The position numbers and the translations under genes were made by a program. Source: Pecten maximus (Eukaryota). Taken from it: a stretch of 64,000 nucleotides of DNA. The notes under the pieces are model-generated. The model saw nothing but the letters and a program-made list of their open reading frames with translations. It had not been told where the DNA came from and ran no database searches. Below are positions 5,471 to 61,500 of the stretch, piece by piece. The stretch spans positions 22,630,001-22,694,000 of the forward strand of contig NC_047015.1 of the NCBI RefSeq assembly GCF_902652985.1. The letters run 5' to 3'. Position 1 is the first letter of the stretch; each line of letters starts with the position of its first letter.

Positions 5471-6383
5471 CTAACCAATATGAACCGTAACAATGTGACT
5501 ATTGGCACGAACTTTGACCCTTGTGTTCTCCATAATCGACCTTGACCTTGTGATAGTGACCATGACCTCAGGCATCATATACAACGATTGAAGGGGAGTA
5601 TCTGAAGTACTACACGTATGTTGATGATAAGAATTGATCGCGCGTGGTCAATGTCAATTTATCTGAATTTATAAATACTGTCGGCCAGAAGCACGGAATT
5701 TACAGCTGTCAGTGTTGGTCAGAGTTTACTACAGAATCGATTGGCAATTTTGTTTATAGCAATGTGTTACCATAGGAACAAACTTATATTTCACTGTTTG
5801 TGTGCAGGATTTGTATTATACATACAAGAATTGCAAATCCTTTGGGAGATTTCAAGACAATAAATGTAGGGAACATATCACATATACACGATCGCTATAA
5901 TCACCCTATCAGCCGTCGGAACTCTTGGCCTTCTATTTTCTCCTGCTGTGTTTACGTTCGTACAGGAAGTTTATACAACGTTGCACTTCTGGGTTTCGGC
6001 GTATCGGATCGTCGAGAACTTCGTCCGCCACATGGCCGAAACTTTTGATTAAGAACCAACTAATTACTGGAGGTATTACAGACATGTTGATGGAATGTTT
6101 CATCAGCTGACATCAACTAGTCCCTACTGTTGTGCCCTTGTCATCGTACCTGCACTATGCATTCAATTGTAAACAGTGCCGACTGTTTCCTCTCCAGACA
6201 CATATTTTTGTATCGCACTAGCTCCCTCTTACCAATACATAAGTAAACCTGTCTGATGCATCACCTGGATACACTCGGCCATGTAAAAACACGTTTTTCT
6301 TTGACATTAACTGTCACCGTGGCGATCCATCACTCGCGAATTAACGTCACTGCTCGCGTACCTCTACAACGTGGAGTGATTAG

Positions 6384-7880
6384 TACATCACACGCGTGGC
6401 TGGCTCCGTCACCTCAACTGTCCCCGTCATGGGACACTACGGACACTACATCACACGCGTGGCTGGCTCCGTCACCTCAACTGTCCCCGTCATGGGACAC
6501 TACGGACACTACATCACACGTGTCACTGACTCCGTCACCTCAACTGGCTCCGTCACCTCAACTGTCCCCGTCATGGGACACTACATCACACGCGTGGCTG
6601 GCTCTGTCACCTCAATTGTCCCCGTCATGTGACACTACGGACACTACATCACACGTGTCACTGGCTCCGTCACCTCAACTGTCCCCGTCACCTCAACTGT
6701 CCCCGTCATGGGACACTACAACACACGTGTCACTGGCTCCGTCACCTCAACTGTCCCCGTCATGGGACACTACATCACACGTGTCACTGGCTCCGTCACC
6801 TCAACTGTCCCCGTCATGGGACACTACATCACATGTGTCACTGGCTCTGTCACCTCAACTGCCCCCGTCATGTCACACTACAACACACGTGTCGCTGGCT
6901 CTGTCACCTCAACTGTCCCCGTCATGTCACACTACAACACACGTGCCGCTGGCTCTGTCACCTCAAATGTCCCCGTCATGTCACACTACATCACACTTGT
7001 CACTGGCTCCGTCACCTCAACTGTCCCCGTCATGGGACACTACAACACACGTGTCGCTGGCTCTGTCACCTCAACTGTCCCCGTCATGTCACACTACAAC
7101 ACACTTGTCACTGGCTCCGTCACCTCAACTGTCCCCGTCATGTCACACTACAACACACGTGTCACTGGCTCCGTCACCTCAACTGTCCCCGTCATGTCAC
7201 ACTACATCACACGCGTGGCTGGCTCCGTCACCTCAACTGTCCCCGTCATGTCACACTACAACACACGTGTCACTGGCTCCGTCACCTCAACTGTCCCCGT
7301 CATGTCACACTACATCACACGTGTCACTGGCTCCGTCACCTCAACTGTCCCCGTCATGTCACACTACATCACACGTGTCACTGGCTCCGTCACCTCAACT
7401 GTCCCCGTCATGTCACACTACCTCACATGTGACGCTGGCTCTGTCACCTCAACTGTCCCCGTCATGTCACACTACAACACACGTGTCACTGGCTCCGTCA
7501 CCTCAACTGTCCCCGTCATGTCACACTACATCACACGTGTCACTGGCTCCGTCACCTCAACTGTCCCCGTCATGTCACACTACATCACACGTGTCACTGG
7601 CTCCGTCACCTCAACTGTCCCCGTCATGTCACACTACATCACACGTGTCACTGGCTCCGTCACCTCAACTGTCCCCGTCATGTCACACTACATCACACGC
7701 GTCGCTGGCTCTGTCACCTCAACTGTCCCCGTCATGTCACACTACATCACACGTGTCACTGGCTCCGTCACCTCAACTGTCCCCGTCATGTCACACTACA
7801 ACACACGTGTCACTGGCTCTGTCACCTCAACTGTCCCCGTCATGTCACACTACAACACACGTGCCGCTGGCTCTGTCACA
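6384..7880. repeat. 54-bp minisatellite, about 27 copies
   Basis: Unit CACTACATCACACGTGTCACTGGCTCCGTCACCTCAACTGTCCCCGTCATGTCA. It gives 18-aa periodic ORFs in all three + frames. Confidence 0.97.
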
Positions 7881-20029: not shown

Positions 20030-23000
20030 AGAAGGACGATCAGAGGCTCTAACCTATAAAACAAGGAAGGCTTGCCTACAGAGGCCCCAACCTATAAAAC
20101 AGGAAGGACGGTTGTCTACAGAGGCCCCAACCTATAAAACAGGAAGGACGGTTGTCTACAGAGGCCTCAATCTATCAAACAGGAAGGACGGTGGTCTACA
20201 GAGGCCCAAGCTATAAAACAGGAAGGGTGGTGGTCTACAGAGGCCCCAACCTATAAAACAGGAAGGACGGTGGTCTACAGAGGCCCCAACATATAAAACA
20301 GGAAGGACGGTGGTCTTCAGAGGCCCCAATATATAAAACAGGAAGGACGGTGGTCTACAGAGGCCCCAACCTATAAAACAGGAAGGACGGTGGTCTTCAG
20401 AGGCCCAACCTATAAAACAGGAAGGACGCTGGTCTACAGAGGCCCCAACCTATAAAACAGGAAGGAAGGTGGTCTACAGAGGCCCAACCTATAAAACAGG
20501 AAGGACGGTGGTCTACAGAGGCCCCAATATATAAAACAGGAAGGACGGTGGCCTACAGAGGCCCCAACATATAAAACAGGAAGGACGGTGGTCTACAGAG
20601 GCCTCACCCTATAAAACAGGAAGGACGGTGGTCTACAGAGGCCCAACCTATAAAACAGGAAGGACGGTGGTCTACAGAGGCCCAACCTATAAAACAGGAA
20701 GGACGGTGGTCTACAGAGGCCCAACCTATAAAACAGGAAGGACGGTGGTCTACAGAGGCCCAACCTATAAAACAGGAAGGACGGTGGTCTACAGAGGCCC
20801 AACCTATAACACAGGAAGGACGGTGGTCTACAGAGGCCCAACCTATAAAACAGGAAGGGTGGTGGTCTACAGAGGCCCAACCTATAAAACAGGAAGGACG
20901 GTGGTCTACAGAGGCCCAACCTATAAAACAGGAAGGACGGCGCTCTACAGAGGCCCGAACATAAAAAACAGGAAGGACGGTGGTCTACAGAGGCCCAATA
21001 TATAAAACAGGAAGGACGGTGGCCTACACAGGCCTCAACCTATAAAACAGGAAGGACGGTGGTCTACAGAGGCCCCAATCTATAAAACAGGAAGGACGGT
21101 GGTCTACAGAGGCCCAACCTATAAAACAGGAAGGACGGTGGTCTACAGAGGCCCCAACCTATAAAACAGGAAGGGTGGTGGTCTACAGAGGCCCAATATA
21201 TAAAACAGGAAGGACGGTGGTCTACAGAGGCCCAATATATAAAACAGGAAGGACGGTGGCCTACACAGGCCTCAACCTATAAAACAGGAAGGACGGTGGT
21301 CTACAGAGGCCCCAATCTATTAAACAGGAAGGACGGTGGTCTACAGAGGCCCAACCTATAAAACAGGAAGGACGGTGGTCTACAGAGGCCCAACCTATAA
21401 AACAGGAAGGACGGTGGTCTACAGAGGCCCAACCTATCAAACAGGAAGGACGGTGGTCTACAGAGGCCCCAATATATAAAACAGGAAGGACGGTGGTCTA
21501 GAGAGGCCCAACATATTAAACAGGAAGGACGGTGGTCTACAGAGGCCCAACCTATAAAACAGGAATGACGCTGGTCTACAGAGGCCCCAACCTATAAAAC
21601 AGGAAGGACGGTGGTCTACAGAGGCCCAATATATAAAACAGGAAGGACGGTGGCCTACAGAGGCCCAATATATAAAACAGGAAGGACGGTGGTCTACAGA
21701 GGCCCCAACCTATAAAACAGGAAGGGTGGTGGCCTACAGAGGCCCAACCTATAAAACAGGAAGGACGGTGGTCTACAGAAGCCCAACCTATAAAACCGGA
21801 AGGACGGTGGTCTACAGAGGCCCCAATATATAAAACAGGAAGGACGGTGGTCTAGAGAGGCCCAACATATTAAACAGGAAGGACGGTGGTCTTCAGAGGC
21901 CCAACCTATAAAACAGGAAGGACGGTGGTCTACAGAGGCCCAACCTATAAAACAGGAAGGACGGTGGCCTACAGAGGCCCAACCTATAAAACAGGAAGGA
22001 CGGTGGTCTACAGAGGCCCCAATCTATCAAACAGGAAGGACGGTGGTCTACAGAGGCCCAAGCTATAAAACAGGAAGGACGATGGTCTACAGAGGCCCCA
22101 ATATATAAAACAGAAAGGACGGTGGTCTACAGAGGCCCAACCTATAAAACAGGAAGGACGGTGGTCTACAGAGGCCCAACCTATAAAACAGGAAGGACGG
22201 TGGTCTACAGAGGCCCAACCTATAAAACAGGAAGGACGGTGGTCTACAGAGGCCCCAATATATAAAACAGGAAGGACGGTGGTCTACAGAGGCCCAACCT
22301 ATAAAACAGGAAGGACGGTGCTCTACAGAGGCCCAACCTATAAAACAGGAAGGGTGGTGGTCTACAGAGGCCCCAATATATAAAACAGGAAGGACGGTGG
22401 TCTACAGAGGCCCAACCTATAAAACAGGAAGGACGGTGGTCTACAGAGGCCCCAACCTATAAAACAGGAAGGACGGTGGTCTTCAGAGGTCCAACCTATG
22501 AAACAGGAAGGACGGTGGTCTTCAGAGGCCCAACCTATAAAACAGGAAGGACGCTGGTCTACAGAGGCCCCAACCTATAAAACAGGAAGGACGGTGGTCT
22601 ACTGAGGCCCCAATATATAAAACAGGAAGGACGGTGGTCTACAGAGGCCCAATATATAAAACAGGAAGGACGGTGGTCTACTGAGGCCCCAATATATAAA
22701 ACAGGAAGGACGGTGGTCTACAGAGGCCCAATATATAAAACAGGAAGGACGGTGGTCTACTGAGGCCCCAATATATAAAACAGGAAGGACGGTGGTCTAC
22801 AGAGGCCCAATATATAAAACAGGAAGGACGGTGGTCTACAGAGGCCCAATATATAAAACAGGAAGGACGGTGGTCTACAGAGGCCCAATATATAAAACAG
22901 GAAGGACGGTGGCCTACAGAGGCCGAACATATTAAACAGGAAGGACGGTGGTCTACAGAGGCCCAATATATAAAACAGGAAGGACGGTGGCCTACAGAGG

Positions 23001-23610
23001 CCGAACATATTAAACAGGAAGGACGGTGGTCTACAGAGGCCCAATATATAAAACAGGAAGGACGGTGGTCTACAGAGGCCCAATATATAAAACAGGAAGG
23101 ACGGTGGTCTACAGAGGCCCAATATATAAAACAGGAAGGACGGTGGTCTACAGAGGCCCAATATATAAAACAGGAAGGACGGTGGTCTACAGAGGCCCAA
23201 CATATAAAACAGGAAGGGTGGTGGTCTACAGAGGCCCCAACCTATAAAACAGGAAGGACGGTGGCCTACAGAGGCCCAACCTATAAAACAGGAAGGGTGG
23301 TGGTCTACAGAGGCCCAACATATAAAACAGGAAGGACGGTGGTCTACAGAGGCCCAACATATTAAACAGGAAGGGTGGTGGTCTACAGAGGCCCAACCTA
23401 TAAAACAGGAAGGACGGTTGTCTACAGAGGCCCCAACATATAAAACAGGAAGGACGGTGGTCTACAGAGGCCCAATATATAAAACAGGAAGGACGGTGGC
23501 CTACAGAGGCCCAATATATAAAACAGGAAGGACGGTGGTCTACAGAGGCCCAACCTATAAAACAGGAAGGACGCTGGTCTCCGGGCCTACAATATAGAAA
23601 AACAGGAAGG
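20030..23610. repeat. 39/40-bp minisatellite, about 90 copies
   Basis: ACAGGAAGGACGGTGGTCTACAGAGGCCC(C)AACCTATAAA repeated. Confidence 0.97.
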
Positions 23611-50201: not shown

Positions 50202-52785
50202 CTGTATCTCCTTGAACAGAACCACTTGTTGTTGGTCAGTGTATGTATCTTGAACAGAACCACTTGTTGTTGGTCAGTGTCTGTATCTCCCTTGAACAGA
50301 ACCACTTGTTGTTGGTCAGTGTCTGTATCTCCCTTGAACAGAACCACTTGTTGTTGGTCAGTGTCTGTATCTCCCTTGAACAGAACCACATGTTGTTGGT
50401 CAGGGTCTGTATCTCCCTTGAACAGAACCACTTGTTGTTTGTCAGTGTCTGTATCTCCCTTGAACAGAACCACTTGTTGTTGGTCAGAGTCTGTATCTCC
50501 CTTGAACAGAACCACATGTTGTTGGTCAGGGTCTGTATCTCCCTTGAACAGAACCACTTGTTGTTTGTCAGTGTCTGTATCTCTCTTGAACAGAACCACT
50601 TGTTGTTGGTCAGTGTCTGTATCTCCCTTGAACAGAACCACTTGTTGTTTGTCAGTGTCTGTATCTCCCTTGAACAGAACCACTTGTTGTTGGTCAGTGT
50701 CTGTATCTCCCTTGAACAGAACCACTTGTTGTTGGTCAGTGTCTGTATCTCCCTTGAACAGAACCACATGTTGTTGGTCAGGGTCTGTATCTCCCTTGAA
50801 CAGAACCACTTGTTGTTTGTCAGTGTCTGTATCTCCCTTGAACAGAACCACTTGTTGTTGGTCAGAGTCTGTATCTCCCTTGAACAGAACCACATGTTGT
50901 TGGTCAGGGTCTGTATCTCCCTTGAACAGAACCACTTGTTGTTTGTCAGTGTCTGTATCTCTCTTGAACAGAACCACTTGTTGTTGGTCAGTGTCTGTAT
51001 CTCCCTTGAACAGAACCACTTGTTGTTTGTCAGTGTCTGTATCTCCCTTGAACAGAACCACTTGTTGTTGGTCAGTGTCTGTATCTCCCTTGAACAGAAC
51101 CACATGTTGTTGGTGAGTGTCTGTATCTCCCTTGAACAGAACCACTTGTTGTTGGTCAGTGTCTGTATCTCCCTTGAACAGAACCACTTGTTGTTTGTCA
51201 GTGTCTGTATCTCCCTTGAACAGAACCACATGTTGTTGGTCAGTGTCTGTATCTCCTTTGAACAGAACCACTTGTTGTTGGTCAGTGTCTGTATCTCCCT
51301 TGAACAGAACCACATGTTGTTGGTCAGTATCTGTATCTCCTTTGAACAGAACCACATGTTGTTGGTCAGTATCTGTATCTCCTTTGAACAGAACCACTTG
51401 TTGTTGGTCAGTGTCTGTATCTCCCTTGAACAGAACCACTTGTTGTTGGTGAGTGTCTGTATCTCCTTTGAACAGAACCACATGTTGTTGGTGAGTGTCT
51501 GTATCTTGAACAGAACCACTTGTTGTTGGTCAGTGTCTGTATCTCCCTTGAACAGAACCATATGTTTTTGGTCAGAGACTGTATCTCCCTTGAACAGAAC
51601 CACATGTTGTTTGTCAGTGTCTGTATCTCCCTTGAACAGAACCACATGTTGTTGGTGAGTGTCTGTATCTCCCTTGAACAGAACCACATGTTGTTTGTCA
51701 GTGTCTGTATCTCCCTTGAACAGAACCACATGTTGTTTGTCAGTGTCTGTATCTCCCTTGAACATAACCACTTGTTGTTGGTGAGTGTCTGTATCTCCCT
51801 TGAACAGAACCACATGTTGTTTGTCAGTGTCTGTATCTCTCTTGAACAGAACCACTTGTTGTTGGTCAGTGTCTGTATCTCCCTTGAACAGAACCACTTG
51901 TTGTTGGTCAGTGTCTGTATCTCCCTTGAACAGAACCACATGTTGTTTGTCAGTGTCTGTATCTCCCTTGAACAGAACCACTTGTTGTTGGTCAGTGTCT
52001 GTATCTTGAACAGAACCACATGTTGTTGGTCAGTGTCTGTATCTCCCTTGAACAGAACCACTTGTTGTTGGTGAGTGTCTGTATCTCCCTTGAACAGAAC
52101 CACATGTTGTTTGTCAGTGTCTGTATCTCCCTTGAACAGAACCACTTGTTGTTGGTCAGTGTCTGTATCTCCCTTGAACAGAACCACTTGTTGTTGGTCA
52201 GTGTCTGTATCTCCCTTGAACAGAACCACTTGTTGTTGGTCAGTGTCTGTATCTCCCTTGAACATAACCACTTGTTGTTGGTGAGTGTCTGTATCTCCCT
52301 TGAACAGAACCACATGTTGTTTGTCAGTGTCTGTATCTCTCTTGAACAGAACCACATGTTGTTGGTCAGTGTCTGTATCTCCCTTGAACAGAACCACTTG
52401 TTGTTGGTCAGTGTCTGTATCTCCCTTGAACAGAACCACATGTTGTTTGTCAGTGTCTGTATCTCCCTTGAACAGAACCACTTGTTGTTGGTCAGTGTCT
52501 GTATCTTGAACAGAACCACATGTTGTTGGTCAGTGTCTGTATCTCCCTTGAACAGAACCACTTGTTGTTGGTGAGTGTCTGTATCTCCCTTGAACAGAAC
52601 CACATGTTGTTTGTCAGTGTCTGTATCTCCCTTGAACAGAACCACTTGTTGTTGGTCAGTGTCTGTATCTCCCTTGAACAAAACCACTTGTTGTTGGTCA
52701 GTGTCTGTATCTCCCTTGAACAGAACCACTTGTTGTTGGTCAGTGTCTGTATCTCCCTTGAACAGAACCACTTGTTGTTGGTCAC
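50202..52785. repeat. 42-bp minisatellite, about 60 copies
   Basis: GTCTGTATCTCCCTTGAACAGAACCACWTGTTGTTGGTCAGT. It gives 14-aa periodic ORFs on both strands and has a 500-bp higher-order duplication near its right end. Confidence 0.97.

Positions 52786-54826: not shown

Positions 54827-54882
<56 letters not shown>
54827..54882. repeat. Poly-C homopolymer (56 nt)
   Basis: Uninterrupted C run. Confidence 0.95.
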
Positions 54883-56210: not shown

Positions 56211-56357
56211 ATGCGACACCAATTACAATTAACTAGCTTACCAAAACTTACCAAGCTTGTTTTAGTGATTCTCAATGTATTGTTTATTATGATGAGTTTC
56301 TGTTTGATTGTACCGGGGATTCTTGTACAACTAGACACCGACTTGTTTAACGACAAA
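56211..56357 (+). pseudogene. Tetraspanin pseudogene, 5' part (N-terminus, TM1, start of small loop)
   Basis: MRHQLQLTSLPKLTKLVLVILNVLFIMMSFCLIVPGILVQLDTDLFNDK has the K-x-x-L-x-x-L-N-x-L-F TM1 pattern, then abuts LINE sequence. Confidence 0.72.
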
Positions 56358-56852
56358 CGTGTTCTGTTATTATCAATAACTTCAAACATTCCTTTTCCTT
56401 ATTCATCTATTTCGTTGAGGATTCTATACACTTGGATGACTGTACTGTAAAGATGGTATTCCAAGTTCTATTAATCTTTCCGGATACGATAAGTCCTTAA
56501 TAGATATAACAAGTTTGGTGGCCCTTCTCTGTACCGTTTTCAATAGCCCTAACATCTTTTTATACAGAGGGTTCAAGACAGTCACTGTATACTCCAAATG
56601 TGGTCGAACATAGATTTGTCCATATGTATGAAGGATCTCTTTAATAGGCCTAATCGCCTGTTCGCTTTTTTCACATTGGCTGCTTCGTGGCTGCTAAACT
56701 TCAAGTCGCAGTCAAATATGACACCAAAGTCTTTTTCATCATCACCCCGAGGAATGTCTTCACCATACATTGTATATTTATGTCTACTGTTGCTATGCCC
56801 AAGGTGAAGGGATTCACATTTACCGGAAGTGATTTCGGCTGCCATTGTTGGA

Positions 56853-56900
56853 TGACCCTGGCTGTTAATAGGACGTTTAACAAAAACAAACCAAACCAAA
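56853..56900 (+). mobile_element. 48-bp 5'-truncated SINE tail inserted in the CR1 RT region
   Basis: TGACCCTGGCTGTTAATAGGACGTTTAACAAAAACAAACCAAACCAAA flanked by TSD TGTTGGA (56846-56852, 56901-56907). It matches the 3' tail of the SINE at 46872. Confidence 0.85.
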
Positions 56901-58458
56901 TGTTGGACCACTCTTCCAGGTTATTAAGGTCATCTTGTAATTTCCTGTTGTCAGAGTTGTTGCTTTCTCCATATATTTTGGTGTCGTCTGCAAATAGTTT
57001 TTTGGCGGAAGTTATTGTTTCTGGTAGGTCGTTGTTGTAGATTAAAAAGAGCACTGGGCCCAATACACTCCCTTGGGAGACCCCACTGGTGACACTTGAC
57101 CAATCCGAAGTTTTTCCATTGACCATAACTCGTTGTTGCCTGTAGCTCAGACAGGATGCTATCCATTTCGATACTTTATTTTCAATTCCGATTTTTTGGA
57201 TTTTTTTTATAGTCTTTGATGAGAGACTGTGTCGAAAGCTTTTTGAAAGTCTAGGTAAATCATGTCCATCATGTTGCCGTCATCTATTGTTTTGGTGATA
57301 TCATCCAGGACCTCCAGGAGCTACAGTGTTGTCGTTTACCCTTTCGGAATCCATATTGACAATCGTTTAATAGCTTATTTTTCTCCAGGTAGTCTATGAT
57401 GCTGTGCCTTAGGATTGATTCCAGGACCTTACATATAATGCTCGTCAAGCTGACCGGCCTATAGTTTAAAGGGTCTTTCTTACTGCCTTTTTTTGAAAAT
57501 TAGGGTAATATTTGCCTCTTTCCAGTTGGATGGTAGTTTTCCTTCTTCCAAAGATTTATTGAACATTTTACTTCGAGGTTTACTTATAATATCTCTTGTT
57601 TCATGCAGTATTTTTGTGTGAATACCGTCAGGTCCTGGCGCTTTTGATGTTTTTAGTTTTGAAAGTTTGGCTTGTACTTTTTCAGCAGTGATCCCCATCT
57701 GTCCCCGTATTTTGAGGGTTGATCGTCGTCGTTGGAATATTTTCAGTATCTTCATTTGTGAAGATTTTACAAAAGCATTAGTTTTGTTTAGGACTTCAGC
57801 CTGTTCTTTGTCATCAGACACTATTGTTCCGTCTTCTGTCTCAATTGGTGAGATACCTGTTTTTGTCTTGATTTTGATGTATTTCCAAAAGCTCTTTGGG
57901 TCCGTTTTGAATTCTATCGTTTTTTCTCATAATCTTTTACAGGCTCTCTTTTCACATTTGTCGCTTGGTTTCTGGCTCTTTTATAACTTGATAGATTTGT
58001 CTGGTTACTATTGCCTCTGTATTTGTACCATTCTTTTCTCTTGTTCTGTAGTGCCTTGATTGTAGTTTCGTTCATCCATGGTTTCCTTGGCCTCATAGGA
58101 CTACCTTTGTTTACTGGTACAGATTTATCCATACACGTCATAATCCGTCAATAAAGTAGGCCCATGATTCCTCCAGGTCCATCTTATTCATCTCTTCCCA
58201 ATTTTGTCGGTCTAGCTCTTGGCAAATTCTTTCGTAGTTGCCTCTATAGAAACAATATCTCTTTTGTGGCGATGTGTTTGAATCAGGCTCTTCTACATTG
58301 ATTATAAAGTTGAATTTTAGGGTGACATATTCACTTTTCCCTAAAGGGTCCCCTACTGTCACGTCTTCCACCATTCCTTCCTCATTAGTGAATACCAGGT
58401 CTAAAATTGATGGTGTGATGCCATGTCTAAATTTTGTGCTTTCGTATATGTGCTGATG

Positions 58459-58695
58459 CACAGGGGCTTGGCACGATTTTCCAAATGATAGTCCATATAT
58501 ATATGTATATAGTATCAAGGGTAGTAACTACAAAGAGGGGGAAGACGAACGTATTTTAAAAAAAATAATTTGTCGTATTCTGCGGGTCAAAAATCTTAGT
58601 GACACATACATTACCTTAAAGAGAAATGTTTTATCTTGATACTATATACATATATATATGGACTATCATTTGGAAAATCGTGCCAAGCCCCTGTG
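58459..58695. mobile_element. 237-bp MITE with perfect 61-bp TIRs and an 8-bp TSD (P-element-like CACAG termini)
   Basis: TIRs at 58459-58519 and 58635-58695. TSD TGCTGATG at 58451-58458 and 58696-58703. Removing it restores the CR1 endonuclease reading YLHQHIYE. Confidence 0.93.
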
Positions 58696-59473
58696 TGCTG
58701 ATGGAGGTAAAGATCTTGGATACATTCTTAAAAACTCCTGGATTGTAGGTTCATTGTTTCCCTTTGTAGTTTCTAGTTCCCAATTTATGTCTTTGTAGGT
58801 GAAGTCGCCCAATATCAGTAAATGCGATGTTCTATTGTTTGCTTCTCTTAGTACTGTTTGTAGACTGTCCGAGTTATTTCTAGAGCTTGATGGGCTTCTA
58901 TATACACATCCTATCAATAGTTTCTCGGGTCCTTCTAATTTAACAGTACACCATACCATCTCCTTAAGTTCATCTCCATCAAATCATCTTCGGTTTCTCC
59001 TGGTAGTTCACTTTTAATGTATAGTATAACTCCACGGCCCTCTGTAAGACTATTGACAAACATGTCATAGCCTTTCAAGCTAAATGAAGACAGTACCACA
59101 GATCACACACATTTAATGGCCATATCGTTTTCCTTGATCTGGATATCACATTTTGAGCACAGGGTCTTCTCATCACTTTCCATTCTCCTTTTAAGACTGT
59201 TTCTCTCAGACATTTTATAGATTATCTGTACAGTTTGCTAAACATCAATATATCTAAGTTACTGTGGTGGAGCAATCTCCAGTCATCAGGTTACTGAGAG
59301 CGTCTATTCGTAGCGACTATGATAGTCCGTAACACTCACGTAGCCAAAAAGTGATTCCTATTTTACCTGCCCAGTATCTACACAGGGCCGGGTTGGGGTG
59401 GACACCATCAGTTAATTGATTGTATATGATTCTTGTGCGTCCTCCTCAGGATTTTTCTTGATCTATACTGAAC

Positions 59474-60705
59474 TTTGGTGCTGTAACGGTAGCCATTTTC
59501 TGGATTGTGCTGAAGACTGATATAGAATCCAAAGTTAAAGACGAATTCCTATCACAACTACAAAATAACTATCAAGTTGACGATCTGACGTCACATCAGC
59601 TCTCTACATCGTGGAACTCGCTCTTCATACAACTGTCGTGTTGTGGTGTTAATTACCTCACAGGACTGGCTAACGACTTCGACAACACTGTTTGGCAGGG
59701 GACGGGTCCGTCTGTGGACATTCCGAAGAACTGCTGCGGAGCAACACTAAATGACTACGGAACGTATTCCAACGGTGTGTGTAGAGATCCAACAGTGTGT
59801 GTAGAGATCCAAGAGTTTGTGTAGAGATCCAAGAGTTTGTGTAGAGATCCAACAGTGTGTGTAGAGATCCAACAGTGTGTGTAGAGATCCAACAGTTTGT
59901 GTAGAGATCCACCAGTGTGTGTAGAGATCCAACAGTTTGTGTAGAGATCCAACAGTGTGTGTAGAGATCCAACAGTGTGTGTAGAGATCCAACAGTGTGT
60001 GTAGAGATCCAACAGTGTGTGTAGAGATCCAACAGTGTGTGTAGAGATCCAACAGGTTGTGTAGAGATCCAACAGTTTGTGTAGAGATCCAACAGTGTGT
60101 GTAGAGATCCAACAGTGTGTGTAGAGATCCAACAGTTTGTGTAGAGATCCAACAGTTTGTGTAGAGATCCAACAGTGTGTGTAGAGATCCAACAGTGTGT
60201 GTAGAGATCCAACAGTGTGCGTAGAGATCCAACAGTGTGCGTAGAGATCCAACAGTGTGTGTAGAGATCCAACAGTGTGTGTAGAGATCCAACAGTGTGT
60301 GTAGAGATCCAACAGGTTGTGTAGAGATCCAACAGTGTATGTAGAGATCCAACAGTGTGTTTAGAGATCCAACAGTGTATGTACAGATCCAACAGTGTAC
60401 ATTTGTATGTAGAGATCCAACAGTGTGTTTAGAGATCCAACAGTGTGTGTAGAGATCCAACAGTGTGTGTAGAGATCCAACAGTGTGTATACAGATAATG
60501 TTAGTTCCAGCTTCTACTCCAGCGGTTGTTTTAACGCCATGAAAAAAAAATCTTTTCGACGTATAGTGATATTTTTATTGGGATAGGGGTATCGGTCATT
60601 ACGACGGAGGCTCTGGGCATTATTTGTGCCATAAATGTTTTTAGAAATATTAATAAAGTTCGTGCGATTAACAATAGGCCGAATACAAAGACAGATATTT
60701 ACTAA
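59474..60705 (+). pseudogene. Tetraspanin pseudogene, 3' part (end of TM3, large extracellular loop, TM4, C-terminal tail)
   Basis: FGAVTVAIFWIVLKTDIESKVKDEF..STSWNSLFIQLSCCGVN..DIPKNCCG..NGVC, then the 20-bp array, then TDNVSSSFYSSGCFNAMKK, an A9 frameshift, and IFSTYSDIFIGIGVSVITTEALGIICAINVFRNINK..TDIY-stop (60703-60705). CCG, PxxCC, GC and the TM4 glutamate are tetraspanin hallmarks. Confidence 0.88.
59769..60497. repeat. 20-bp minisatellite, about 36 copies, inside the tetraspanin coding region
   Basis: CCAACAGTGTGTGTAGAGAT repeated with period 20. Confidence 0.98.
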
Positions 60706-61289
60706 CTTGACATTCACCTCCTCATTCGTCTGTTATAATGTAGATCAACTTATTAACATCTTCCATGTCAGTGAGTTAGACGATACACCCAAATGTTGAG
60801 AAATGGATAGAAAAATGCATACTGTATTTTACATTCATCGACCGTAAGTTATATTCGGAGTGATCTCCCTTGTGGAAATGGAGTAAATTAAAGGTACATC
60901 GAACGTACAACATACAACAATGCATGTACTGTATAATTTGGACCCGATTTGACAAATGACTTAAATATAGGGGATATAACGTATAAATCTGATACATGTT
61001 AAAAGTTAGCATTAATGTAATTGTATGTGAGATCATGTGTAATAATGAGACCAATTGTTCCGTGTTCGAGGAAATCCTGAAGGTGTTATCATTTGTTGTG
61101 TTGCCAAGAATCCAAACGTTTAACATAACACTATGTAAGAGTTGTCTGCTCCTAGCCAGATAAAGGGTATCAGCTGTACTGATCTACTAAATTGGAGTTG
61201 AATTGTCTGATAGTTATCCATTAGAACATTTACCTGATATTTGATGCCCGAGTTTTTGTGTGGCAATATCAAAATACGTGCCCAGATTT

Positions 61290-61500
61290 TAAAGGGATAA
61301 CTTATATTAATCACGGTTGGTGGCCCGAATGGAAGCAAGCGAGGGGTCTTACTGTGGGAGGAAACCGGAATAACGGGGGAACCCACGTGGTCGGCAAGGT
61401 GAACCAATACCTTTGTCGCATTGATCGGGGAATCGAACCAAGGCCTCCTAGGTTAAAGGCCAGTGTACATGAGTGGCATATACCACTGGATTACCCGATC
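61290..61500 (-). mobile_element. tRNA-derived V-SINE copy (RUDI/BivaV-like)
   Basis: Minus strand has an A-box-like TAATCCAGTGG, B-box GGTTCGATTCC, and V-domain-like GTGGGTTCCCCCGTTATTCCGGTTTCCTCCCAC. Confidence 0.8.

What the first reader, a model, noticed from the sequence alone, without database searches (positions are those of the whole stretch)
59760..60545. A minisatellite caught at birth: 20 bp of tetraspanin coding sequence amplified about 36-fold in place
Seen: the array starts with the gene's own CCAACGGTGTGTGTAGAGAT (codons S-N-G-V-C-R-D) and ends with CCAACAGTGTGTATACAGAT followed by AATGTTAGT. Collapsing it to one unit restores a continuous large extracellular loop, YSNGVC(T/R)DNVSSSFYSSGCFNAM, with the conserved cysteines. 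Inference: the unit was not imported by a transposon but generated de novo from unique local sequence, with no obvious pre-existing repeat as seed. This is the one array in the window whose ancestral single-copy state can be read directly, so it calibrates how the others may have arisen.
Basis: partly seen in the sequence, partly recalled or inferred. Interest (0 to 1): 0.8.

Follow-up and report, generated by a model that had tools for sequence, protein, structure and literature searches.

The report
Home-grown minisatellite in a dead tetraspanin gene
A 20-base piece of a scallop tetraspanin gene's own reading frame was copied head-to-tail about 36 times on the spot; an intact one-copy version in another scallop shows the starting state, but the host gene is an already broken pseudogene, so this is a clean example of a known process rather than a new one.

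Summary
Window 59768-60496 is a 729-bp array of 36 units: 35 of 20 bp and one of 28 bp.

- **Unit is private to this locus.** At 0-1 mismatch all 29 hits in the 918-Mb genome lie in this array. At 3 mismatches, hits elsewhere are no more frequent than for a reversed control.
- **Flanks are tetraspanin large-loop coding sequence.** The syntenic Argopecten irradians orthologue is an intact, intronless 280-aa gene. It and four in-genome paralogues carry the segment once (S-N-x-x-C-T-D). The window pieces tile the orthologue with no residue gained or lost.

In-place origin from unique sequence is therefore well supported.

Two corrections are needed.

- **The host is a pseudogene.** 208 bp (EC1/TM2/TM3 start) are replaced by about 3.1 kb that includes a non-LTR retrotransposon. 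A net +2 frameshift precedes TM4 and is identical in three independent DNA samples. The array has stops in every forward frame, and no RNA run holds the locus.
- **"At birth" is overstated.** The array has 12 unit variants, and its 3' end is shared by three individuals.

The junction microhomology is only 1 nt. Three other arrays tested in the window are also private to their loci.

The parts
56223..56356 (+). N-terminal/TM1 piece of the tetraspanin pseudogene (..KLTKLVLVILNVLFIMMSFCLIVPGILVQLDTDLFNDK..)
   Evidence: blastn to Argopecten orthologue L027 6026-6137, 75% over 112 bp, no gaps; tblastx to paralogue exon 1; protein alignment A1.
56360..59085 (-). Non-LTR retrotransposon (endonuclease + reverse transcriptase) inserted in the gene
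   Evidence: Other genomic copies stop matching at 56360 and 59085; Pfam RVT_1 and Exo_endo_phos_2 on minus-strand ORFs.
59086..59491 (.). Filler with no tetraspanin homology; with the retrotransposon it replaces the 208 bp that encode EC1, TM2 and the TM3 start in the orthologue. 59369-59483 is a repeated fragment.
   Evidence: Orthologue 6138-6345 has no counterpart in the window; 59369-59483 matches C14:18319499-18319613 at 82% and the match does not extend into the loop; TM2 not detectable.
59492..59767 (+). End of TM3 and large extracellular loop up to the array (CCG and PKNCC motifs), open frame
   Evidence: Pfam Tetraspanin E 7e-8; 77% DNA identity to orthologue 6346-6627, no gaps; 71% aa identity to P0001.
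59768..60496 (+). The minisatellite: 36 units (35 x 20 bp, one 28 bp) derived from the codons S-N-S/G-V-C-T/R-D of the loop
   Evidence: unit private to the locus; 3' units present in three DNA samples.
60497..60549 (+). Distal loop piece NVSSSFYSSGCFNAMKK, same frame as the pre-array flank
   Evidence: aligns to orthologue TVTSGYYSTGCYNAMKN without gap.
60538..60560 (+). Frameshift zone: net +2 nt relative to the orthologue (A-run of 9 at 60541-60549 and an extra C)
   Evidence: Pairwise alignment; 2 gaps in blastn; no indel here in contigs of X1, X3, X5.
60550..60705 (+). TM4 and C-terminal tail with stop, in a frame shifted by +2 from the loop
   Evidence: 73% DNA identity to orthologue 6622-6819.

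Best explanation
The array is a locus-private minisatellite that arose in place in the Pecten maximus lineage. A 20-bp segment of the large-extracellular-loop coding region of an intronless tetraspanin gene was duplicated in tandem and then expanded. The gene is the orthologue of Argopecten irradians 'tetraspanin-18B-like'. The ancestral segment was about TCC AAC AGT GTG TGT ACA GA. The first duplication happened with at most 1 nt of junction microhomology. The array then grew to about 36 copies by out-of-register events: replication slippage, or unequal sister-chromatid or repair-synthesis exchange of one to several units. The host gene is now a pseudogene and the array has no evident function; it is a neutral by-product. 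Shown: the array, its private unit, the single-copy state in orthologue and paralogues, synteny, and the gene's other lesions. Inferred: the mechanism of the first duplication and of growth, and that the array began at or after loss of function, because a 20-bp duplication shifts the frame.
For: Array anatomy. Unit uniqueness: 29 of 29 hits at 0-1 mismatch lie in the array; at 3 mismatches 84 non-array hits against 101 for the reversed control. Single-copy state: paralogues read YSNAACTD, FSNPQCTD, YTNAACTD and YINAACTD once, inside an exon; the Argopecten orthologue reads FSNSACTD-TVTSGYYSTGC once in an uninterrupted 843-bp ORF. Synteny: five collinear blastn blocks. Tiling without indel at the array position: alignment A1. 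Edge units keep flank-side ancestral bases: ACA GAT appears in the last unit as in the orthologue. Adjacent identical variant units and 68-108-bp higher-order repeats near the 3' end point to stepwise local growth. Pseudogene status: 208 bp missing with a retrotransposon in place; net +2 frameshift present in three samples; 29-32 lineage-specific amino-acid changes against 7-14 in Argopecten; no RNA run holds the locus and run X7 has zero depth. No other close copy in the genome.
Against: The copy number and the left junction are known only from the reference assembly. No 1x or 2x allele was seen, so the early steps are reconstructed and not observed. One nt of microhomology is less than the 3 bp or more typical of microhomology-mediated tandem duplication (PMC13167724), so the first step may follow another route. 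Overall dN/dS of 0.15 against Argopecten, and no stop in 216 aligned codons outside the lesions, show the gene was functional until fairly late. The array could therefore have been the killing lesion and not a post-mortem event. A 28-bp array 4.4 Mb away shares a 16-nt core.
Confidence: 0.85

Rival explanations
1. Timing variant: the first 20-bp duplication struck a still-functional gene and was itself the inactivating mutation; the retrotransposon insertion and the +2 frameshift came later.
For: dN/dS of 0.15 overall and third-position identity of 54% against 82% at second positions show long constraint. There are no stops in the 216 aligned codons outside the three lesions. The excess dN on the Pecten branch is modest, 0.154 against 0.077.
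Against: Nothing orders the three lesions. A frameshifting duplication in a constrained gene would normally be purged. The retrotransposon-associated loss of 208 bp is an equally good first hit.
Confidence: 0.25
2. The unit was imported or templated from another repeat, for example the 28-bp array at C1:27.08 Mb that shares the core ACAGTGTGTGTAGAGA, or from a transposon.
For: A shared 16-nt core with units of that array.
Against: The period differs (28 against 20), and the other 10-12 nt of that unit are absent here. Every base of the window unit is accounted for by the orthologue's single-copy codons. A chance 16-18-mer match to one of 20 rotations in 918 Mb is expected about 0.5 times or more. 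At 2 mismatches or fewer there are only two isolated hits elsewhere.
Confidence: 0.03
3. The array is tolerated because it is spliced out as an intron (GT..AG sites exist in the units) and the gene still works.
For: The extra 708 bp is a multiple of 3. GT and AG dinucleotides flank possible splice points.
Against: The TM2-coding part is missing. TM4 is out of frame in three individuals. None of 18 RNA-labelled runs holds the locus and the one laid has zero depth. The simplest splice would delete the conserved loop cysteine.
Confidence: 0.03
4. Assembly artefact: the array or its length is produced by mis-assembly of repetitive reads.
For: Copy number cannot be checked with short contigs. Depth of the consensus 50-mer relative to flanks (9.6x in X1, 7.2x in X3) is below the reference multiplicity of 13.
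Against: Independent samples X1 and X3 reproduce the variant-rich 3' part (98-bp contigs with no difference) and the junction. The consensus words are multi-copy in all three samples.
Confidence: 0.02

Closest known systems
Minisatellite birth by tandem duplication of unique sequence (Haber & Louis 1998; Taylor & Breden 2000; microhomology-mediated tandem duplication, PMC13167724)
   Same: A non-repetitive segment goes from 1x to 2x and then expands. The ancestral single copy is identifiable in relatives. Edge units are the least homogenised.
   Different: Only 1 nt of junction microhomology, against the usual 3 bp or more. No 2x or 3x intermediates seen. The host is a metazoan pseudogene in an exceptionally array-rich region.
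Coding minisatellites of yeast cell-wall genes (PMC2566889, PMC6162428)
   Same: A repeat made from a gene's own coding sequence.
   Different: Those units are multiples of 3 and are translated and selected. This 20-bp unit breaks the frame and carries stops, and the gene is dead.
Transposon-derived or transposon-borne tandem repeats (PMC3389668, PMC6947457)
   Same: Minisatellite-sized arrays in a repeat-rich animal genome.
   Different: The unit is not found in any other locus or element. The retrotransposon in the same gene lies 680 bp away and is unrelated to the unit.
Argopecten irradians tetraspanin-18B-like (P0001) and the Pecten maximus tetraspanin-9-like cluster on C13 (P0106)
   Same: Same family. 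The window pieces are 63% identical to P0001 over 213 columns and 42% to P0106. The CCG, CC, C and GC loop cysteines are conserved.
   Different: The window copy lacks TM2, is frameshifted and carries the array. The C13 genes have five introns that the window copy (four positions testable) and P0001 lack.

Membership tests
Minisatellite / VNTR | Head-to-tail units of about 10-100 bp in many copies | tested here: met
   36 units of 20 bp, TRF score 1218.
Minisatellite / VNTR | Copy number or unit order varies between individuals | tested here: inconclusive
   Depth ratios of 9.6x, 7.2x and about 4.5x against reference multiplicity 13. X5 lacks contigs for 60330-60401 and differs at 4 letters in 60414-60483. 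Contigs cannot size an array.
De novo tandem repeat born from unique sequence (Haber-Louis model) | Single-copy ancestral state at the same position in relatives | tested here: met
   Syntenic orthologue and four paralogues carry the segment once.
De novo tandem repeat born from unique sequence (Haber-Louis model) | Short direct repeats (microhomology, typically 3 bp or more) flanking the duplicated core | tested here: not met
   Periodic extent is 20n+1; only a single T is shared. Later mutation could have erased more.
De novo tandem repeat born from unique sequence (Haber-Louis model) | Low-copy (2x, 3x) alleles segregating or present in close relatives | not tested
Dispersed or transposon-borne satellite | Unit occurs at other loci or inside a mobile element | tested here: not met
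   All hits at 0-1 mismatch are in the array; hits at 3 mismatches are at control level.
Tetraspanin (Pfam PF00335), functional gene | Family signature with the CCG motif and paired loop cysteines | tested here: met
   Pfam E 7e-8 on the flank. CCG, PKNCC, NGVC and SGC align with conserved cysteines.
Tetraspanin (Pfam PF00335), functional gene | Four transmembrane segments in one open frame | tested here: not met
   TM2 and the TM3 start are missing, there are stops in the array, and TM4 is out of frame.
Processed retrogene | Lacks the introns of its multi-exon relatives | tested here: met
   Paralogue introns after ..MRGK..SIE..YYAT and ..VIE are absent in the window. All five are absent in the 843-bp Argopecten ORF.
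Processed retrogene | Poly(A) remnant, target-site duplications, identifiable parent | not tested
   Not examined. The nearest multi-exon relatives are only about 42-53% identical, so any such marks are probably erased.

The most novel reading that the evidence does not exclude
The Pecten maximus lineage has an unusually active, sequence-unspecific process that turns arbitrary unique 20-40-bp segments into long private minisatellites with essentially no microhomology and no transposon vehicle. The process would be strongest in particular regions. The window is 53% arrays in 27 arrays, and all four units tested are private to their locus. The syntenic Argopecten segment has none. The tetraspanin-derived array would be the one case where the substrate is known to the base, making the process measurable.
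Probability: 0.3. Interest if true: 0.65.

Novelty: new member of a known kind. Interest (0 to 1): 0.4.

Why it matters
Cases where a long animal minisatellite can be traced base by base to a known single-copy ancestor are uncommon. A recent paper still describes why particular segments expand as unresolved (PMC13167724). This locus gives a clean before/after pair: the Argopecten 1x state and the Pecten 36x state. It arose with 1 nt of microhomology, in a genome region where every array tested is private. It is therefore a useful calibration point for how bivalve minisatellites arise without transposons. It does not reveal a new mechanism, and the array has no functional consequence, because the gene is dead.

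Tried and rejected
1. **Laying reads on the whole locus:** Only 60330-61400 was laid, so the left junction, the retrotransposon insertion and a possible 1x allele were not checked in other individuals.
2. **Word-based protein search with the 109-aa flank:** nothing found, because that search only considers proteins of 60-190 aa. The exhaustive search was then used.
3. **Looking for TM2 between the retrotransposon and the loop block:** only a non-significant trace at 59360-59398. That stretch turned out to belong to a repeated fragment also found on C14, so my early idea of a contiguous TM2-TM3 remnant, and of a splice acceptor at 59450, was dropped. One search included one local query made by joining two paralogue exons. 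The window pieces were merged only inside scripts, for identity and dN/dS counts.
4. **Guess that the C14-like fragment is an esterase part of a LINE ORF1:** no Pfam hit, so left unnamed.
5. **My first inference that the G of AAC-GGT in unit 1 is ancestral:** reversed by the orthologue, which has AAC AGC.
6. **dS per branch:** could not be computed because of saturation.
7. **TM4 piece searched in the genome:** matches only itself.
8. **Long minus-strand ORFs through the array:** a by-product of a unit with no stop on that strand, not evidence of a gene.

Full report
**1. Observation**

The sequence at 59768-60496 is a head-to-tail array with a 20-bp period. TRF reports 36.0 copies, 92% matches and score 1218.

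- Read unit by unit, there are 36 units. Seventeen are identical to the consensus TCCAACAGTGTGTGTAGAGA.
- There are 12 variant types, and one unit is 28 bp long.
- The periodic extent is 36 x 20 + 8 + 1 bases. The final shared base is a single T.
- The DNA added relative to one copy is 708 bp, so the reading frame before and after the array is the same.
- A 20-bp unit rotates through all three frames, so the array has a TAG every 60 bp in each forward frame.
- The reverse strand of the unit has no stop. This explains the long minus-strand ORFs; they are not evidence of a gene.

**2. Is the unit private?**

- At 0-1 mismatch, all 29 hits in the 918-Mb assembly lie inside this array. The reversed control gives none.
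- At up to 3 mismatches there are 84 hits outside the array, against 101 for the reversed control, so this is background.
- A 28-bp-period array at C1:27.08 Mb shares a 16-nt core.
- The period and the rest of that unit differ. A chance match of that length to one of the 20 rotations of the unit is expected about 0.5 times or more in a genome of this size.
- I therefore treat the shared core as coincidence.

**3. What the flanks are**

- Window 59462-59788 hits Pfam Tetraspanin (E 7e-8).
- The assembly's own paralogues cluster on C13 at 16.19-16.24 Mb.
- Each paralogue reads the homologous segment once, inside an exon, and continues into the loop: YSNAACTD-TVTSGYYAT, FSNPQCTD-SLVTGYYES and YTNAACTD/YINAACTD-TANSGTYWPE.
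- The paralogues have introns after ..CMLVV..MRGK..SIE..YYAT and ..VIE.
- The window reads straight through the last four of those positions.

**4. The orthologue**

- The word-based search saw nothing in its length range, so I ran the exhaustive search.
- It found P0001: 280 aa, 71% identical over the whole flank, E 3e-46.
- One source names it tetraspanin-18B-like of Argopecten irradians.
- It is encoded by a single uninterrupted 843-bp ORF in assembly GCA_041381155.1.
- That locus is collinear with the window in five blastn blocks, including blocks outside the gene, so it is the syntenic orthologue.
- At the array position the orthologue reads TTC TCC AAC AGC GCA TGC ACA GAT ACC GTC.
- The window's first unit reads TAT TCC AAC GGT GTG TGT AGA GAT. 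Its last unit reads TCC AAC AGT GTG TAT ACA GAT, followed by AAT GTT AGT.
- In the protein alignment, the four window pieces tile the orthologue with no residue gained or lost at the array. The loop cysteines (CCG, CC, C, GC) are aligned.
- The last unit keeps the orthologue's ACA GAT; the consensus unit has the derived AGA GAT.
- The ancestral Pecten segment was therefore about TCCAACAGTGTGTGTACAGA.
- The Pecten lineage had converted AGCGCATGC into AGTGTGTGT, a (GT)4 tract, inside the future unit.

P0106, named as a Pecten maximus protein, lies on a contig of 39,606,779 bp. That is exactly the length of this assembly's C13, so the window genome is Pecten maximus.

**5. The host gene is dead**

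- Orthologue bases 6138-6345, which encode EC1, TM2 and the TM3 start, have no counterpart in the window.
- In their place lies a non-LTR retrotransposon at 56360-59085. Its ends are mapped by where its other genomic copies stop matching. It has endonuclease and reverse-transcriptase domains on the minus strand.
- A further 59086-59491 is unrelated filler. It includes a fragment that is 82% identical to a place on C14.
- TM2 cannot be found.
- Downstream of the array, the window has a net +2 nt relative to the orthologue within 60538-60560, involving an A-run of 9 and an extra C. This puts TM4 out of frame.
- Contigs from three independent DNA samples (X1, X3, X5) cover this zone with no indel. 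X1 and X3 also reproduce the last units and the 3' junction. The frameshift and the array end are therefore real and shared, not assembly errors.
- None of 18 RNA-labelled runs of the species holds any word of the locus. The largest one laid (X7) has zero depth over 60330-61265.
- No other close copy of the gene exists in the genome.

**6. How long has it been dead?**

- Over 216 aligned codons, dN/dS against Argopecten is 0.15. Third positions are 54% identical and second positions 82%. The Pecten copy was therefore under constraint for most of the time since the split.
- It also carries 29-32 lineage-specific amino-acid changes, against 7-14 in Argopecten, and twice the branch dN (0.154 against 0.077).
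- There are no stops outside the three lesions.
- Together these fit a late but not very recent loss of constraint.
- A 20-bp duplication is frameshifting. The array's first step was therefore either the inactivating mutation or came after inactivation. The data do not order the three lesions.

**7. Mechanism**

Shown: the single-copy substrate, the private unit, and the least-homogenised edges.

Inferred:
- A first tandem duplication occurred with at most 1 nt of microhomology.
- Growth then followed by out-of-register replication or repair events.

Adjacent identical variant units support stepwise local duplication: two CAAGAGTTTG units, two GTGCG units, and pairs of TTTG units. So does a repeated [consensus x3, GGTT] block 13 units apart, and 68-108-bp higher-order periods near the 3' end.

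The standard model (Haber & Louis 1998, and Taylor & Breden 2000, as cited in PMC13167724 and PMC3389668) expects flanking microhomology. PMC13167724 reports arms of 3 bp or more at 90% of the recurrent loci it analysed. That feature is not met here. The internal (GT)4 tract may have favoured stalling or slippage, but this is speculation.

**8. Context**

- The window is 53% tandem arrays, in 27 arrays.
- Three further arrays tested (units at 741-2497, 20041-23580 and 50202-52784) are each private to their own locus genome-wide.
- Three unselected 10-kb Pecten stretches on C13 are 10-20% arrays, and one on C14 is 0%.
- The syntenic 12.8-kb Argopecten stretch has none.
It also motivates the novel case.

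**9. Verdict**

The core inference, de novo in-place origin from the gene's own unique sequence, is well supported. Two qualifiers need correction:
- 'Coding sequence' should be 'pseudogene'.
- 'At birth' should be 'an established array'.

This is a well-documented new example of a known process, of moderate interest. My tests agree with that note, except that its PDE11 context was not examined.

Noticed in passing
window 1-64000: 53% of the window is minisatellite arrays (27 arrays, periods 18-156 bp). Three tested units (arrays at 741-2497, 20041-23580 and 50202-52784) are each private to their own array in the 918-Mb genome. The syntenic Argopecten stretch (L027) has no arrays. Other Pecten stretches have 0-20%.
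   Followed up: partly
window 56360-59085 (minus strand): Non-LTR retrotransposon with Exo_endo_phos_2 and RVT_1 domains. Its closest copies are on C18:13.418-13.421 Mb and C1285, at 82-93% identity. It sits where 208 bp of the tetraspanin ORF are missing.
   Followed up: partly
window 59369-59483; L026 4996-5115: A 115-bp fragment 82% identical to C14:18319499-18319613. The best frame is on the window's minus strand (..RTRILLNQLTDGVHPNP..) and has no Pfam hit. Its origin is unknown.
   Followed up: partly
G000:C1:27081943-27083368 (L022 943-2368): A 28-bp-period, 51-copy array whose unit shares a 16-nt core (ACAGTGTGTGTAGAGA) with the tetraspanin-derived unit. Judged coincidental, but GT-tract-containing units may be over-represented among arrays.
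   Followed up: partly
window 61298-61400: A very high-copy short element. Word depth is in the thousands to hundreds of thousands in all DNA runs, and it is also present in the RNA-labelled run. It is probably a SINE- or MITE-like repeat.
   Followed up: no
L028, L029, L030 (Logan contigs of three runs): P0103 is a 275-aa tetraspanin, 64% identical to the Argopecten protein and 53% identical to the window pieces. It is encoded as one uninterrupted ORF. It may be a third member of the intronless lineage in an unnamed species. Whether those runs are DNA or RNA is unknown.
   Followed up: no
window 54827-54882: A run of 56 C. It matches G/C runs near the Argopecten locus only as low-complexity sequence.
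   Followed up: no
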